Positions 2,888 to 24,940 of a stretch of DNA of 64,000 nucleotides are shown here, one piece after another. Where the stretch lies: IMG/VR virus record IMGVR_UViG_3300045971_000577, positions 248,001 through 312,000 of that record. One strand, given 5' to 3'. A program made the position numbers and the translations under genes. The first letter of the stretch is position 1. Every line of letters starts with the position of its first letter. Under the pieces are notes generated by a model. That model searched no databases and was not told where the DNA came from. It saw nothing but the letters and a program-made list of their open reading frames with translations.

Positions 2888-2966
2888 TGGTCTCGGTGGT
2901 GGGATTTGAACTCACATTATTCTTCGCCCCAAACGAAGCGCCATGACCAGATTAGGCGACACCGAG
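2888..2966 (-). tRNA. tRNA-Pro(TGG)
   Basis: Loop TTTGGGG; CCA. Confidence 0.92.
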
Positions 2967-3539
2967 TTTATTCTGAAATTCTATTATATAGTTATTTATC
3001 TTTTCTTCTATCTTTGTAAATAATCCTCTGTGGCAATATGCGTGATGCGTAGGACACAATGGAATCAAGTTTGTAATCGAGTTATTATCTCTGTTGCAAT
3101 CTAAATGATGGACATCTACTGCATCTGTTTCGCCACAAACTACACACTTCTTTTCGTGGTGACTATAGCATATTGTCGAATACTGTGTATATCTTTCTGG
3201 CTTATTTCTTAATTCTCTAAAAAATTTATTCGAGCAACTATGCGAACATGTACCCTTGCTGTGCTTATAATCTTTTATTACATTTTCGCATACAACACAG
3301 TTCTTTGTGTTTGCTGGATTTAGATAACATGCATCCTGATGCTTGGTTCTATTCGGTTCCGATATATTCTTATTGCAAAATATGCAATTTATCTTTTTCT
3401 TATTTACTAAAATCCAGTTGCTCGGTTTGTCAGTTTTCTTATAGCTCAAATGAGCACGAAAGGCCTTTTCACTCTTGTAAACTTTACCATTATTTGGACT
3501 TGTGTATGTCCCATCGATGTTGCGATATTCTTGCATCAA
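2952..3539 (-). CDS. HNH homing endonuclease
   Basis: CVVCGETDAVDVHHLDCNRDNNSITNLIPLCPTHH; CATAAATA late promoter just upstream; 3' end overlaps tRNA-Pro. Confidence 0.9.
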   Translation of the reverse strand: MMQEYRNIDGTYTSPNNGKVYKSEKAFRAHLSYKKTDKPSNWILVNKKKINCIFCNKNISEPNRTKHQDACYLNPANTKNCVVCENVIKDYKHSKGTCSHSCSNKFFRELRNKPERYTQYSTICYSHHEKKCVVCGETDAVDVHHLDCNRDNNSITNLIPLCPTHHAYCHRGLFTKIEEKINNYIIEFQNKLGVA

Positions 3540-3559
3540 CTATTTATGCTCGGAGCATA

Positions 3560-4078
3560 AGTTTTGCACAAATCGCGAACATCGACCATGAATTATTGCT
3601 TGTGTGGGTCTTTCCAAATACACCCTGGTCACTAACGATTCGGCCCCCGGTATGTTTGACGCATCCATGGATGCAAAGTGTTACTACTCACTCGGGCTGT
3701 TTACCGTAAACCCCACAAAACCGCCCAACTCTCGTGTGGCCATGTTGGCGAGACCCCTCTAAAATACGTCGCAAGGATTGACGGGTACACTTTTACATGC
3801 GGTACCGTACATGTGGAATTTGTGTTTCGCTCAGTGTTTTCGACGCACCTTGCTAACGTTTCAACTCACGTGGCAGTTGACTATACCAAAAGTTCGAGCA
3901 TAGTTAAGTATATCTCAAGTAACCCGACGCAGCAGGTTACAACTATTACCCAGTTTAGGAGCTTGGCAACTATTCTCCGCTACGATTTTACACCGCGTGC
4001 CTGGTGCGACTGGACTGGCCAAGGTTTTCACTCCTCGTTTTACCCGGCTTTCCGATCTCTCGGTGCCGCGCCATATTC
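3560..4078 (-). ncRNA. Candidate large ornate ncRNA (~520 nt; GOLLD/ROOL-class by size and context, family not confirmed)
   Basis: GC-richer non-coding stretch with many hairpins (CCGA-GAGA-TCGG, GTAACC/GGTTAC, GCAAGG/CCTTGC, GTTTAC/GTAAAC, GCATC/GATGC) among tRNA genes. Confidence 0.6.
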
Positions 4079-4079
4079 T

Positions 4080-4253
4080 TTACTTCAACAGACCCCAACT
4101 TGCGCCAATCGGCTCAGTATCGTATCCACATTCCCTGAGTTGAGTAGCAACCCACGCTGCTATCTCTTCTCTACTCTTGTTATGCATATATTCTGCACTT
4201 ACAAGAGCAACTTGGAACATAATATCGATTAGGTCTTGTTCTTTGCTTCTCAT
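4080..4253 (-). CDS. Hypothetical protein (MRSKEQDLIDIMFQ...GASWGLLK)
   Basis: ORF track, trimmed to the ATG after tRNA-Val. Confidence 0.6.
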   Translation of the reverse strand: MRSKEQDLIDIMFQVALVSAEYMHNKSREEIAAWVATQLRECGYDTEPIGASWGLLK

Positions 4254-4259
4254 AATATT

Positions 4260-4334
4260 TGGTGGGCGGTGAGGGTTTCGAACCCCCGACAACCTGAATG
4301 TAAATCAGGGACTCTACCACTGAGCTAACCGCCC
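4260..4334 (-). tRNA. tRNA-Val(TAC)
   Basis: Loop TTTACAT; CCA. Confidence 0.93.
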
Positions 4335-4342
4335 AAATATCT

Positions 4343-4621
4343 CTAACTTGACTCTATTTTACCGCCTAGCAATGCTACTGTCAATGACTCCGAATCTGGT
4401 TGTGTACCGTTTTTCAGTGTGATTGATGTCACCCATTCGTTGAATTCATCCATTAGCCAAACACAACCGGACCACTCAAATGTTCCTTCTGCGCCGTCTA
4501 AAAATCCTCGAGAGTGGGCGACCCATTTTACCAATCCACTATCGCATGCTCGTTTTATGAGCGGCAACAGTGCCTTATCAAATCCTGTACAACTAACATA
4601 TTCAAGTTCTGGCCAGGCCAT
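4343..4621 (-). CDS. Hypothetical protein
   Basis: ORF track. Confidence 0.7.
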   Translation of the reverse strand: MAWPELEYVSCTGFDKALLPLIKRACDSGLVKWVAHSRGFLDGAEGTFEWSGCVWLMDEFNEWVTSITLKNGTQPDSESLTVALLGGKIESS

Positions 4622-5101: not shown

Positions 5102-5366
5102 ATTGAATAGAATAGCTAAAGCCGCTTTTTCACCACAAATCCAATACCATAGTACCTACAGAATAAAGATGTATGCTTTATCCCTGCCTATAGTCGAAGG
5201 GCCAATTATTCCCTTACTTTAGCCCTCTGGCCCCCAAATACAGTGGTGACCAATTACGCTAATCGCTGTCTAAACTCCACCTCGGTCGATAACCGAAACT
5301 TGTTCGGGTGTTTCGAGTTCAGTTCAACGTGCTGGTATCGGCGTCGCCGTAGACGCTATTCTAACT

Positions 5367-5471
5367 TGGTGCCATGAGGATGGATTCGAACCATCACATT
5401 CGCTAGCCCGCACCGTTCCTCGAGACTGTTGCGGGCAAAATCACGTCCTCTACCGATTGGGATACTCTGGC
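5367..5471 (-). ncRNA. Atypical tRNA-like RNA with a long hairpin replacing the anticodon loop
   Basis: D-arm TCCCAATCGGTAGAGGA, T-arm GATGG-TTCGAAT-CCATC, ACCA end; inserted GCCCGCA/TGCGGGC stem. Confidence 0.6.
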
Positions 5472-7569: not shown

Positions 7570-7644
7570 TGGTGCGTCTGGAGGGAATCGAACCCTCGTC
7601 ATAGGATTTAGAATCCCGTACTCTAACCGCTGAGCTACAAACGC
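7570..7644 (-). tRNA. Amber suppressor tRNA (anticodon CTA)
   Basis: GCGTTTG/CAGACGC acceptor, ACCA; anticodon arm CGGGA-TTCTAAA-TCCTA; anticodon at 7609-7611. Confidence 0.85.
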
Positions 7645-12952: not shown

Positions 12953-13203
12953 GTTTTCAAACTAACCTAAACGAACTGTTTGCATCCGGTAACCCATATG
13001 CGGTGGCAATAGCAGAGAAGATAAAGAATATCGACGATGCGTATGCTAATAAACTCATCACTGCGGATGAAGCTAAAGACCTTCTCAACGATATGAAAAC
13101 GGAAGAAGCATTAGTTGATCTTGCCAACAATTTGCAAATAAAACTCTATGTTCAGCAAACAATCGATAAGTTGATATTTCTTGTCGAGAATGTGATTTTT
13201 TAG
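12949..13203 (+). CDS. Hypothetical protein coupled to the lipoprotein
   Basis: ATGA overlap. Confidence 0.7.
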   Translation: MSFQTNLNELFASGNPYAVAIAEKIKNIDDAYANKLITADEAKDLLNDMKTEEALVDLANNLQIKLYVQQTIDKLIFLVENVIF

Positions 13204-13208
13204 TCATA

Positions 13209-13234
13209 AGAATAGGAACCGAAGTTCCTATTCT
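13209..13234. terminator. Hairpin terminator between convergent units
   Basis: Perfect 11-bp stem with a UUCG loop on the minus strand. Confidence 0.75.
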
Positions 13235-13500
13235 GGATTTTCTGTTGCCAGGCATTCCTGCCCCGTGGTTTACCGCTTTTTAGGCAGCAAGAGCCTCAGT
13301 GTAAAACGAATCATTTGCGTTTACTTTTTGTTTTCTTCGATTTACGGTCGTTGCTCACCGAGCGATAAGAAGCCTACTCAATACCCAGGCGATTCCGGAT
13401 CGGGCCCATAACTAAAACTTCACAAAAGGCTTAGTGGTGGACCCGGGGGGATTCGAACCCCCTTGTTGAATGTCTTTCTGTTTCCTACTTTACGCTGTTA
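13235..13500 (-). ncRNA. ssrA: Circularly permuted (two-piece) tmRNA
   Basis: Acceptor piece (T-arm, CGGGTCC-ACCA ending 13435) lies upstream of the 5' end GGGCCCG (13407); tag ANDSFYTEALAA* at 13280-13318; G3:U70; outer ends approximate. Confidence 0.85.
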
Positions 13501-13620
13501 TTTTCCTTAATTCTGATTCATAATAGTGTAGCAGACCTACAATAGTCATACGATCAAATCTGTTACCGTATCCTAAATGCCGTCTGTAGTAATCAATCTG
13601 TGATTCAATAAATGATTTAC

Positions 13621-18693: not shown

Positions 18694-18767
18694 TGGTAGG
18701 GCTGCAGGGAATCAAACCCTGGTTGACCGGTTAAAAGCCGGATATTCTATCATTGAATTACAACCCC
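18694..18767 (-). tRNA. tRNA-Lys(TTT)
   Basis: Loop CTTTTAA; CCA. Confidence 0.9.
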
Positions 18768-24865: not shown

Positions 24866-24940
24866 TGGGCAGACGGTTAGGAGTTGAACCTAATATATCT
24901 CTTTCACAGAGAGATGTGTTGCCGTTACACTACACGCTGC
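24866..24940 (-). tRNA. tRNA-His(GTG), irregular acceptor stem
   Basis: Loop CTGTGAA; C73 and G-1. Confidence 0.75.

What the first reader, a model, noticed from the sequence alone, without database searches (positions are those of the whole stretch)
3560..4078. ~520-nt ornate ncRNA candidate between tRNA genes
Seen in sequence: a dense series of helices with GNRA-capped and palindromic stems, and no credible ORF on the transcribed strand. Established: giant phage-associated RNAs (GOLLD, ROOL) are of this size and sit near tRNA genes. I cannot assign a family from memory, so it could be a known or a new class.
Basis: partly seen in the sequence, partly recalled or inferred. Interest (0 to 1): 0.65.

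Follow-up and report, generated by a model that had tools for sequence, protein, structure and literature searches.

The report
New ornate RNA in huge-phage tRNA island
The stretch encodes a real, heavily folded non-coding RNA of about 480 bases that sits among the tRNA genes of a 369-kb phage, is conserved in related uncultured phages, matches no catalogued RNA family, and carries a sequence signature suggesting that copies of the RNA pair with each other.

Summary
The RNA lies on the minus strand at window 3596-4072; 3540-3595 is the leader of the downstream HNH gene.

The transcribed strand has no ORF, and the 184-aa plus-strand ORF is not conserved.

I found 13 distinct homologues in uncultured phage-like contigs, all between tRNA-Val(UAC) and tRNA-Pro(UGG).
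- Short forms are 286-325 nt.
- Long forms are 477-547 nt; the window holds a long form.
- One copy is about 900 nt and has an ORF inside the expansion site.

Covariation is strong.
- 3' domain: 49 pairs are 90% paired, against 32-48% when the partner is slid. 34 pairs show changes on both sides, and 0 of 500 shuffles reach this.
- One of these helices is a pseudoknot stem that was not in the alignment model.
- 5' domain: 91% paired, on an alignment not fitted to structure.

No Rfam 15 family matches, including GOLLD, ROOL, HEARO, RNase P, tmRNA and introns.

One hairpin loop is a self-complementary tetranucleotide (CAUG, CUAG or CGCG). Its middle pair switches AU/UA/GC, which is the signature used to support symmetric kissing loops in GOLLD and OLE.

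Best reading: a new class of tRNA-island phage RNA, co-transcribed with the tRNAs and probably self-associating. Its function is unknown, and no RNA-seq data were available.

The parts
3596..4072 (-). The whole RNA, in its long form (477 nt, from the 5' GGCGCG to the 3' AAGCAA)
   Evidence: Boundaries come from alignment with 12 other homologues. Model R1 hits only this locus in the 369-kb genome.
4012..4072 (-). 5' domain. It holds the invariant GGCGCG; hairpin P2 (4046-4067, GAGA tetraloop); and P3 (GGGU at the 5' end of 4037-4045, paired with 4012-4016), which encloses hairpin P4 (4020-4037, 8-nt loop AGUGAAAA)
   Evidence: On MAFFT alignment A8, 16 pairs are 91% paired against 20-51% when slid. 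8 pairs change on both sides, and 0 of 500 shuffles reach this.
3819..4011 (-). Expansion domain, present only in long forms. It contains a pseudoknot-like hairpin followed by UAAAA (3990-4007); a second pseudoknot (stem GGAG/CUCC at 3958-3978, whose loop GUUGCC pairs with GGUAAU at 3945-3950); a hairpin at 3919-3940; and a hairpin at 3856-3871 with loop GAGUUGAA followed by UAG, which resembles the core motif at 3636-3655
   Evidence: Short forms lack it. Its helices covary by eye among window, L013, L028 and L078. A peat-metagenome variant changes C to U at 3965 and G to A at 3950, which are the two sides of one predicted pair.
3780..3814 (-). Core H-type pseudoknot. Stem S1 is ACAUG/CAUGU; stem S2 is GGUAC (in the S1 loop) paired with GUACC downstream. 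The invariant UUCCA precedes it at 3814-3818
   Evidence: S1 is 92% paired, with 5 of 5 pairs changed on both sides. S2, which was not part of the model, is 73-84% paired, with 4 of 5 pairs changed on both sides.
3694..3776 (-). Three variable hairpins: H6 (3756-3776), H7 (3730-3753) and H8 (3694-3714)
   Evidence: They are 83-96% paired. Nearly every pair shows compensatory changes (helices 3-6).
3676..3693 (-). H9, a conserved hairpin with the 8-nt loop AGUAGUAA (family consensus AGUAGNAA)
   Evidence: It is 94-98% paired, with two covarying pairs; the loop is nearly invariant.
3661..3674 (-). H10, a hairpin with the self-complementary loop CAUG (stem GCAUC, loop CAUG, stem GAUGC): the candidate intermolecular kissing loop
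   Evidence: The stem covaries at 4 of 4 pairs. Loop positions 2 and 3 read AU in 5 sequences, UA in 5 and GC in 2, so they are complementary in 12 of 12 sequences with letters (one of these, L013, is a doubtful alignment). Positions 1 and 4 read C-G in 12 of 13. The covariation score is reached by 0 of 500 shuffles.
3598..3655 (-). Near-invariant 3' domain. It holds ACAUACCGGGGGCCGAAUCG, whose GCCG is predicted to pair with the 5'-terminal UGGC at 4070-4073. It also holds H11 (3598-3636), whose inner stem GGGU/ACCC carries a loop with UUGGAAA that is complementary to the UUCCA at 3814-3818
   Evidence: This block was the search pattern that recovered the family. The inner stem covaries (UA 6, AU 3, GC 3, CG 1). 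The outer stem, the 5'-3' closing helix and the UUCCA/UGGAA pairing never vary, so they are untested.
3540..3595 (-). Not part of the RNA. This is the leader of the HNH gene, with a hairpin at 3545-3561
   Evidence: It aligns with L013:2948-2997, directly upstream of that phage's HNH ORF and 670 nt away from its copy of the RNA. The same flank follows the RNA in L067, L078, L096 and L097.
2952..3539 (-). Free-standing HNH endonuclease ORF (195 aa). Its 3' end overlaps tRNA-Pro(UGG) at 2888-2966
   Evidence: Weak Pfam HNH_3 and HNH_2 matches, below the gathering thresholds, plus PHROG HNH families, best 4e-8. More than 300 relatives of the same length. It is not consistently next to the RNA.
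4080..4256 (-). Small conserved ORF (58 aa from the internal ATG) between tRNA-Val and the RNA
   Evidence: Relatives at 54-60% identity in three other huge phages end at the same residue, so this is not a gene split by an intron.
4260..4334 (-). tRNA-Val(UAC), the conserved upstream neighbour. A promoter-like site (TTGACA, 17 nt, TAAAAT) lies at 4356-4384
   Evidence: In L013, L028, L064 and L078 the RNA begins 4-10 nt after this tRNA's CCA end.

Best explanation
This is a member of a previously uncatalogued family of large, multi-pseudoknotted non-coding RNAs. They are encoded in the tRNA islands of a clade of huge, uncultured freshwater and sediment phages.

Shown:
- The family is conserved in sequence and secondary structure.
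- It always lies on the tRNA strand between tRNA-Val(UAC) and tRNA-Pro(UGG).
- It has a core of about 290 nt: a 5' three-helix domain, an H-type pseudoknot, three variable hairpins, two hairpins with 8-nt AGU..AA loops, a hairpin with a palindromic loop, and a near-invariant 3' domain.
- It has one expansion site that holds nothing, a 170-260-nt structured insert (183 nt in the window), or about 620 nt including an ORF.

Inferred:
- The RNA is transcribed as part of the polycistronic tRNA precursor and released by the enzymes that trim the neighbouring tRNAs. In several phages it starts a few bases after the CCA end of tRNA-Val and ends less than 40 nt before the next tRNA.
- It folds into a compact particle.
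- It pairs with a second copy through the self-complementary H10 loop, giving at least a symmetric dimer and possibly a larger RNA-only assembly of the kind solved for GOLLD, ROOL and OLE.

Its cellular role is unknown. Given where it is encoded, a role during takeover of host translation is most plausible.
For: Homologues and synteny:
- 13 distinct homologues were found: through the neighbouring HNH gene, through an IMG/VR pattern scan, and through a metagenome pattern scan.
- Synteny Leu(UAG)-Val(UAC)-RNA-Pro(UGG)-Ala-Asn is conserved.

Covariation:
- 3' domain on A9: 89.8% of cells paired against 32-48% when slid. 34 of 49 pairs change on both sides, 106 compensatory cells against 32.5 in shuffles, and 0 of 500 shuffles reach this (10-sequence version).
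- Pseudoknot stem S2 was not in the covariance model, and 4 of its 5 pairs still covary.
- 5' domain on a MAFFT alignment not fitted to structure: 91.1% against 20-51%.

Strand and coding:
- G-U pairs are common, for example UG in 12 of 13 sequences at one H11 pair and GU in 6 at one H9 pair. On the other strand these would be A-C mismatches, which points to an RNA read from the minus strand.
- There is no ORF and codon scores are very negative. Antisense ORFs are not conserved.

Novelty and copy number:
- No Rfam 15 match, and no match in 50,697 deposited phage records.
- One copy per genome.

Self-association:
- The H10 loop is CAUG, CUAG or CGCG in 11 of 13 sequences. The central dinucleotide covaries AU/UA/GC.
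- Adjacent nucleotides cannot pair within one chain. Kretsch et al. used this same argument for OLE L9.3 and GOLLD L21a (PMC12286853).

Population variants:
- One clean compensatory pair in the insert pseudoknot; the changes in the 3' domain fall in loops or repeat bases that other homologues carry. In the insert, C139>A breaks a predicted pair of the 3919-3940 hairpin and A197>U breaks a tentative pairing.
Against: - No transcript data: all runs holding the sequence are DNA. Expression, ends and processing are therefore inferred.
- The folding energy of the single sequence is no better than shuffles.
- The alignments used for the 3' domain were fitted to the nested part of the structure, which inflates pairing percentages.
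- The 13 sequences are related, and three are near-identical.
- The closing helix (UGGC/GCCG), outer H11 and the UUCCA/UGGAA pairing never vary, so they are unsupported.
- The H10 palindrome is absent in L013 (loop GAUA) and L064. It could instead reflect a DNA-level palindrome, or a site bound by a dimeric protein.
- One relative (L079/L080) keeps only the 5' 90 nt, so the RNA is dispensable in at least one lineage.
Confidence: 0.6

Rival explanations
1. A tRNA-directed RNA. The two conserved hairpins with 8-nt loops (AGUGUAAA and AGUAGGAA types, each with a U...A spaced as in a T-loop) would form a tRNA-elbow-binding platform, like those of RNase P, T-box stem I and the L1 stalk. The RNA would then bind, chaperone, protect or process the phage's own tRNAs.
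For: It always lies inside the tRNA array and directly follows a tRNA. The two loops are among the most conserved elements. A second structured RNA in the same array also starts right after a tRNA-like element.
Against: The T-loop reading is from memory and from sequence pattern only; there is no structural test. No Rfam RNase P, T-box or tmRNA model matches, even at E<=10. The architecture lacks the P1 and P4 arrangement of RNase P RNA.
Confidence: 0.15
2. A protein-binding scaffold or decoy RNP. The near-invariant single-stranded blocks (ACAUACCGGGGGCCGAACCGUUAGUGACC, UUGGAAA, CACACAAGCAA) would be recognition sites for a phage or host protein, for example a ribosomal protein, a nuclease or a defence factor. 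The H10 palindrome would be bound by a dimeric protein.
For: Blocks of 20-35 nt are identical across sequences whose helices have diverged freely, which is typical of ligand or protein contact surfaces. OLE RNA works as an RNP although it also dimerises (PMC12286853).
Against: No conserved protein gene accompanies the RNA. The neighbours are a small ORF, an HNH gene, a DUF3850 ORF or nothing, depending on the phage. Invariant blocks are equally expected for tertiary or quaternary RNA contacts.
Confidence: 0.17
3. A mobile element: a group I or group II intron, or an HNH-associated guide RNA (HEARO/omega-RNA type) that travels with the downstream HNH endonuclease.
For: An HNH ORF starts 57 nt after the RNA in the window, and also follows it in L067, L078, L096 and L097.
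Against: - The HNH gene and its leader occur without the RNA (L014, L016, L076), and the RNA occurs without the HNH gene (L028, L073, L071).
- In L013 the two are 670 nt apart.
- The HNH gene is tied to tRNA-Pro, not to the RNA.
- The upstream ORF ends where its relatives end, so no gene is split.
- No Rfam intron or HEARO hit.
- The protein is 195 aa and has no RuvC domain.
Confidence: 0.03
4. No RNA product with a function of its own. Instead it would be a structured spacer that merely directs processing or stability of the tRNA precursor, or a DNA-level element, or the plus-strand 184-aa ORF would be the real gene.
For: It is co-oriented and probably co-transcribed with the tRNAs. The plus-strand ORF at 3678-4232 is open in the window.
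Against: - A core of about 290 nt with at least 12 helices, a pseudoknot and long invariant blocks is far more than a spacer needs.
- G-U pairs fit only the minus-strand RNA.
- The plus-strand ORF has no family hit and overlaps the conserved minus-strand 58-aa gene.
- That ORF is interrupted in every homologue: the longest antisense frames are 36-104 aa and lie in different frames.
Confidence: 0.05

Closest known systems
GOLLD RNA (Rfam RF01998)
   Same: - Large, ornate and phage-encoded; lies in or beside tRNA islands; no ORF; multiple pseudoknots.
- A well conserved 3' region with a more variable 5' part.
- A variable linker that can hold foreign genes: tRNAs in GOLLD, an ORF in L078 here.
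- A loop whose palindromic sequence covaries, as in GOLLD L21a (PMC12286853).
   Different: - No sequence or structure match to the Rfam model at E<=10.
- The core is about 290 nt against more than 800 nt.
- Different hosts and habitats: huge phages of ponds, sediments and peat.
- Quaternary structure has not been tested here.
ROOL RNA (Rfam RF03087)
   Same: Similar size to the window's long form (about 480-580 nt). Phage or prophage encoded, often near tRNAs, with pseudoknots, a poorly conserved internal linker, and no known protein partner (PMC12286853).
   Different: No match to the Rfam model. The helices and conserved blocks are unrelated. Short forms of only 286 nt exist.
Stable RNAs of the phage T4 tRNA gene cluster (species 1 and 2, rnaC/rnaD; from memory, not checked here)
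   Same: Non-tRNA stable RNAs encoded inside a phage tRNA cluster, co-transcribed with the tRNAs and cut out of the same precursor. Their function is still unknown.
   Different: The T4 RNAs are about 120-140 nt and structurally simple. No homology was tested or is expected.
HEARO / omega-RNA of IsrB-IscB
   Same: A structured RNA of a few hundred nt lying next to an HNH-type nuclease gene in some copies.
   Different: The HNH gene here is a 195-aa free-standing homing-type enzyme without a RuvC domain. It associates with tRNA-Pro rather than with the RNA. No Rfam HEARO hit.

Membership tests
GOLLD (RF01998) | Match to the Rfam covariance model (conserved 3' domain with its pseudoknots) | tested here: not met
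   cmscan against Rfam 15 gives no GOLLD hit at the gathering score, at E<=10 on window 3300-4400, or at E<=1 on five homologue loci.
ROOL (RF03087) | Match to the Rfam covariance model | tested here: not met
   The same searches give no hit.
Large ornate phage tRNA-island RNAs (descriptive kind that holds GOLLD and ROOL) | Phage-encoded and adjacent to tRNA genes on the same strand | tested here: met
   The source is a 369-kb IMG/VR phage record with terminal repeats. All 13 copies lie between tRNA-Val and tRNA-Pro.
Large ornate phage tRNA-island RNAs (descriptive kind that holds GOLLD and ROOL) | Several hundred nt, non-coding, with an extensive covariation-supported structure that includes pseudoknots | tested here: met
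   Searches show no ORF. Searches show about 65 pairs, 42 of them with compensatory changes, and a pseudoknot stem that covaries.
RNA-only homo-oligomers (GOLLD, ROOL, OLE as solved by cryo-EM) | Symmetric intermolecular contacts, seen in sequence as covarying palindromic loops | tested here: inconclusive
   The H10 loop is CAUG, CUAG or CGCG, with the central pair AU in 5, UA in 5 and GC in 2 sequences. Two members lack the palindrome. No physical test is possible with these tools.
RNA-only homo-oligomers (GOLLD, ROOL, OLE as solved by cryo-EM) | Assembly of the purified RNA into a defined multimer | not testable with these tools
   This needs in-vitro transcription followed by native PAGE, SEC-MALS or cryo-EM.
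Group I / group II introns | Interrupts a host gene whose exons join to give an intact product; matches the catalytic-core models | tested here: not met
   The upstream ORF ends as in its relatives. The RNA lies between genes. No Rfam intron hit.
HEARO / omega-RNA | Obligate adjacency to IsrB or IscB (RuvC with or without HNH), and a match to RF02033 | tested here: not met
   The neighbouring protein has an HNH domain only. The RNA and the HNH gene occur independently. No Rfam hit.
RNase P RNA / tmRNA | Match to the Rfam models; a P1 and P4 architecture, or a tRNA-like domain formed by the two ends | tested here: not met
   No hit at E<=10. The phage's tmRNA is elsewhere, at 13189-13535. The 5' end pairs internally and not with the 3' end.

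The most novel reading that the evidence does not exclude
The RNA is a third, independent class of phage tRNA-island RNA that self-assembles without protein into a symmetric multimer, either a dimer or a cage. The H10 kissing loop would form one bridge, and the variable expansion site would be a tolerated or encapsulated linker. The same huge-phage tRNA arrays carry at least one more unrelated structured RNA (window 5105-5365). Together this would mean that RNA-only assemblies are a recurrent invention of phages with large tRNA sets.
Probability: 0.3. Interest if true: 0.85.

Novelty: new variant of a known kind. Interest (0 to 1): 0.72.

Why it matters
GOLLD and ROOL are the only large phage RNAs of this kind described so far, and their function is still unknown even though their cage structures have been solved. 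This RNA is an unrelated class with three shared traits:
- the same genomic habit: it sits inside tRNA islands and is probably cut from the tRNA precursor;
- the same modular build: a conserved core plus a free linker;
- the same sequence signature of symmetric self-pairing.

That would show the phenomenon is general rather than a curiosity of two families. It would also extend it to huge phages, which carry near-complete tRNA sets, tmRNA and suppressor tRNAs.

The short 286-nt forms are a much smaller and more tractable object for structure and function work than the 600-800-nt RNAs. The natural series of short, long and ORF-bearing forms is a ready-made deletion analysis.

Tried and rejected
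- **Thermodynamic test:** the minimum free energy against dinucleotide shuffles is not significant on either strand, so it is uninformative.
- **Direct DNA similarity:** no match in deposited phage records. No paralogue in the phage's own genome. Nothing in three distantly related huge phages.
- **Relatives through proteins:** the 92-aa ORF and the 1453-aa ORF found no relatives in IMG/VR. The 58-aa ORF found three huge phages that lack the RNA and the tRNA context.
- **Split gene or intron:** rejected, because the upstream ORF is complete.
- **TAG recoding:** reading TAG as Q opens no minus-strand frame across the RNA; it only adds 47 codons (46 residues and the TAG) in front of the HNH ORF's TTG start. 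Whole-genome ORF statistics under altered stop codons were not decisive, so I kept table 11.
- **Pattern scans:** the IMG/VR scans returned mostly chance hits and only one true homologue. All 13 hits of the prokaryote-genome scan were chance, with no model match. No prophage copy or host clue was found.
- **HNH look-ups:** several gave arrays without the RNA (L014, L016, L076, L100) or no DNA at all (P0007).
- **Alignment limits:** MAFFT alone misaligns the variable hairpins. Glocal model alignment of the split long forms gives garbage in the missing half. I therefore counted the two domains separately.
- **RNase P idea:** the window reads GGAAAGCCGGG, like the P4 strand of RNase P RNA. That segment is the variable 3' strand of P2 in the homologues, so the resemblance is coincidental.
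- **Sequencing runs:** there are no RNA libraries. Laying DNA contigs gave only a few population variants.
- **Literature:** four searches found no description of such an RNA.
Full report
**Setting.** The window is bases 248001-312000 of a 369,145-bp IMG/VR phage record with direct terminal repeats, judged complete. Near-identical DNA occurs only in pond metagenome runs. The first 29 kb carry 34 tRNA genes and a permuted tmRNA, all on the minus strand. The minus strand is therefore the transcribed strand at the finding.

**Local gene order.** Reading along the minus strand:

| Feature | Window coordinates |
|---|---|
| Promoter-like site (TTGACA, 17 nt, TAAAAT) | 4384-4356 |
| tRNA-Val(UAC) | 4334-4260 |
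| 58-aa ORF | 4256-4080 |
| ORF-free stretch | 4079-3540 |
| 195-aa HNH endonuclease ORF | 3539-2952 |
| tRNA-Pro(UGG), overlapped by the end of the HNH ORF | 2966-2888 |

- There is no ORF of note on the minus strand under table 11 or with TAG read through.
- Codon log-odds trained on the phage's long ORFs are -0.37 to -0.49 for the three minus-strand frames. The median for ORFs of at least 150 aa is +0.06.
- G+C rises to 0.46-0.51 here, against 0.32-0.37 in the HNH gene next door.
- The folding energy of the single sequence is not better than shuffles on either strand. The sequence alone would not prove anything.

**Homologues.**
- Direct DNA searches in deposited phages and in the phage's own genome found nothing.
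- The HNH protein has more than 300 relatives of the same length. The contig encoding one of them (L013) holds a 70-77% identical copy of the ORF-free stretch (nhmmer E = 5e-16).
- The most conserved block then served as an exact pattern. It gave one IMG/VR contig (L028) and nine further true metagenome contigs (eleven with the two copies of L028).
- More HNH look-ups added L078, L096, L097 and L099.
- In all there are 13 distinct sequences, plus a truncated remnant in L079/L080.
- Every copy lies on the tRNA strand between tRNA-Val(UAC) and tRNA-Pro(UGG). The wider order Leu(UAG)-Val-RNA-Pro-Ala-Asn is conserved.
- None of the 13 pattern hits in 185,579 prokaryote genomes is a true match.

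**Boundaries and forms.**
- Alignment places the RNA from an invariant GGCGCG (window 4072) to AAGCAA (window about 3596).
- The last 50 nt before the HNH start, including the hairpin at 3545-3561, align instead with the sequence just upstream of the HNH gene in L013. That is 670 nt away from L013's copy of the RNA. This stretch is the leader of the HNH cassette.
- Six sequences are short forms of 286-325 nt. Their 5' 65 nt and 3' 220-260 nt are contiguous (L096, found later, is a seventh, about 299 nt).
- The window, L013, L028 and L097 carry a 170-260-nt insert at one fixed site, between CCAGU and UUCCAC.
- L078 carries about 620 nt there, including an 80-aa DUF3850 ORF.

**Structure.** I derived helices from RNAalifold on the short forms and from inspection of the alignment.

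| Element | Window coordinates | Notes |
|---|---|---|
| Closing helix | 4070-4073 with the GCCG of the invariant block | 4 bp, never varies |
| P2 | 4046-4067 | GAGA loop |
| P3 enclosing P4 | 4012-4045 | 8-nt loop of the type AGUGUAAA |
| H-type pseudoknot S1/S2 | 3780-3814 | both stems covary |
| H6, H7, H8 | 3694-3776 | variable hairpins |
| H9 | 3676-3693 | loop AGUAGNAA |
| H10 | 3661-3674 | palindromic loop |
| Invariant block ACAUACCGGGGGCCGAAYCG | 3636-3655 | used as the search pattern |
| H11 | 3598-3636 | loop contains UUGGAAA |

A covariance model built from four short forms (R1) recovers all members and nothing else in the loci and the genome.

**Covariation in the 3' domain.** This uses the model-derived alignment of 13 sequences.
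- The 49 pairs, including the pseudoknot stem S2 that was not in the model, are 89.8% paired. With the partner slid by 1-3 columns the figure is 32-48%.
- 34 pairs show a change on both sides.
- There are 106 compensatory cells, against 32.5 in shuffles. None of 500 shuffles reaches the observed values.
- The 10-sequence version gives the same picture.

**Covariation in the 5' domain.** This uses a plain MAFFT alignment, so it is not fitted to the structure.
- The domain is 91.1% paired, against 20-51% when slid.
- 8 of 16 pairs are compensatory, and 0 of 500 shuffles reach this.

**Caveats.**
- The sequences are related and three are near-identical.
- The 3' alignment leans towards the nested structure.
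- The closing helix, outer H11 and the UUCCA/UGGAA pairing never vary, so they are untested.

**Strand.** G-U pairs are frequent: UG in 12 of 13 sequences at one H11 pair, and GU in 6 at one H9 pair. They fit only an RNA read from the minus strand.

**The insert in the window (3819-4011).**
- It is itself built of similar modules: a hairpin followed by UAAAA like the core pseudoknot; a second pseudoknot whose stems covary among window, L028 and L078; and a hairpin with loop GAGUUGAA followed by UAG, which resembles the invariant core block.
- A peat-metagenome contig 93% identical to this part changes C to U at 3965 and G to A at 3950. These are the two sides of one predicted pseudoknot pair.
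- A freshwater variant of the 3' domain changes only loop positions or bases that other homologues also carry.

**What it is not.**
- Rfam 15, with 4,227 models, gives no hit. This holds at the gathering scores for the whole window, at E<=10 for 3300-4400, and at E<=1 for five homologue loci. GOLLD, ROOL, HEARO, RNase P RNA, tmRNA, the intron models and riboswitches are all excluded as families.
- It is not an intron. The upstream 58-aa ORF ends at the same residue as its relatives in three other huge phages, and nothing is split.
- It is not an HNH-associated guide RNA. The HNH gene occurs without the RNA (L014, L016, L076, L100), and the RNA occurs without the HNH gene (L028, L073, L071). 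What the HNH gene always accompanies is tRNA-Pro.
- It is not a leader for a fixed downstream gene, because the downstream gene differs between phages.
- The plus-strand 184-aa ORF has no family hit. It overlaps the conserved minus-strand ORF and is interrupted in every homologue.

**How it probably works.**

*Processing (inferred).*
- In L013, L028, L064 and L078 the RNA begins 4-10 nt after the encoded CCA of tRNA-Val.
- In L073 and L071 it ends 35-40 nt before the next tRNA.
- No terminator-like site lies on the minus strand between the flanking tRNAs.
- I infer that it is made as part of the tRNA precursor and released by the tRNA-end-processing nucleases.

*Self-association (inferred).*
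- The H10 loop is CAUG in 5 sequences, CUAG in 4 and CGCG in 2, always between a C-G closing pair.
- The two central nucleotides are AU, UA or GC in 12 of 12 sequences with letters; one of these, L013, is a doubtful alignment.
- Neighbouring nucleotides cannot pair within one chain. Maintained self-complementarity through double changes therefore points to pairing between two copies.
- This is the argument Kretsch et al. used, and verified by cryo-EM, for OLE L9.3 and GOLLD L21a (PMC12286853).
- I therefore propose at least a symmetric dimer.

*Function.* The biological role remains unknown. The location suggests a link with the phage's translation-takeover module.

**Comparison and novelty.**
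- In genomic habit, size, modular build and possible self-pairing, this RNA behaves like GOLLD and ROOL. By the only available membership test, their covariance models, it belongs to neither.
- I found no description of it in four literature searches. It is absent from 50,697 deposited phage genomes.
- I class it as a new variant of a known kind: a new family of large tRNA-island phage RNAs. It is notable for its small 286-nt core and its occurrence in huge phages.

**Also seen.** The same array holds a second, unrelated, conserved structured RNA of about 260 nt at 5105-5365. It starts right after a tRNA-like element. 32 of its 61 predicted pairs are compensatory across six phages, and it has no Rfam match.

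Noticed in passing
window 5105-5365 (minus strand), with a tRNA-like element at 5370-5471: This is a second conserved, ORF-free structured RNA of about 260 nt. It begins directly after a 102-nt tRNA-like sequence that ends in CCA (Rfam tRNA 26.6 bits, below the threshold; not called by ARAGORN). Homologues occur in L097, L100, L013, L078 and L028. RNAalifold predicts 61 pairs, 32 of them with compensatory changes. It has no Rfam family and looks like another new RNA class in the same tRNA array.
   Followed up: partly
window 2952-3539 with 2888-2966; also L013, L014, L016, L076, L078, L079, L096, L097, L099, L100: The 195-aa HNH endonuclease belongs to a family of more than 300 same-length relatives. 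In every context read, its last codons overlap the 5' end of a tRNA-Pro(UGG) gene. A conserved leader of about 50 nt with a hairpin (window 3545-3561) travels with it. This suggests a homing endonuclease that targets the site just upstream of tRNA-Pro.
   Followed up: partly
window 7570-7644 (minus strand): A tRNA with anticodon CUA scores 66.9 bits against the Rfam tRNA model; ARAGORN labels it 'Pyl'. It is an amber-suppressor tRNA. Long ORFs are open under table 11, so I did not assume recoding, but late-gene TAG readthrough was not examined.
   Followed up: no
window 13189-13535 (minus strand): The phage encodes a permuted (two-piece type) tmRNA with tag peptide ANDSFYTEALAA.
   Followed up: no
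L078:1602-2215: In this relative the RNA's expansion site holds about 620 nt, including an 80-aa ORF with a DUF3850 hit and a 40-aa ORF. A protein gene therefore sits inside the RNA gene, much as tRNAs sit in the GOLLD linker.
   Followed up: partly
L079:2370-2434 and L080:1579-1667: Only the 5' 90 nt of the RNA survive here, and the HNH gene follows directly. The RNA appears to have been destroyed by the HNH cassette, or by a deletion, in this lineage.
   Followed up: partly
L097:1880-1930 and L099:1704-1990: L097 has an extra copy of the module 'GUUGAAACGUUAG ... GCGAAACAC' upstream of GGCGCG. L099 lacks the GGCGCG 5' domain and has a different structured 5' region of about 280 nt. The family is therefore more modular than the model captures.
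   Followed up: no
window 18697-18767 and 24876-24933 (minus strand): Rfam finds a full tRNA (61 bits) and a partial tRNA (41 bits, model positions 7-64) that ARAGORN did not list.
   Followed up: no
L016:5505-5897 and L016:1-135; L076:797-991: Related huge-phage contigs encode a ribosomal protein L7/L12-like gene and an RNA polymerase omega (Rpb6)-like gene beside their tRNA arrays.
   Followed up: no
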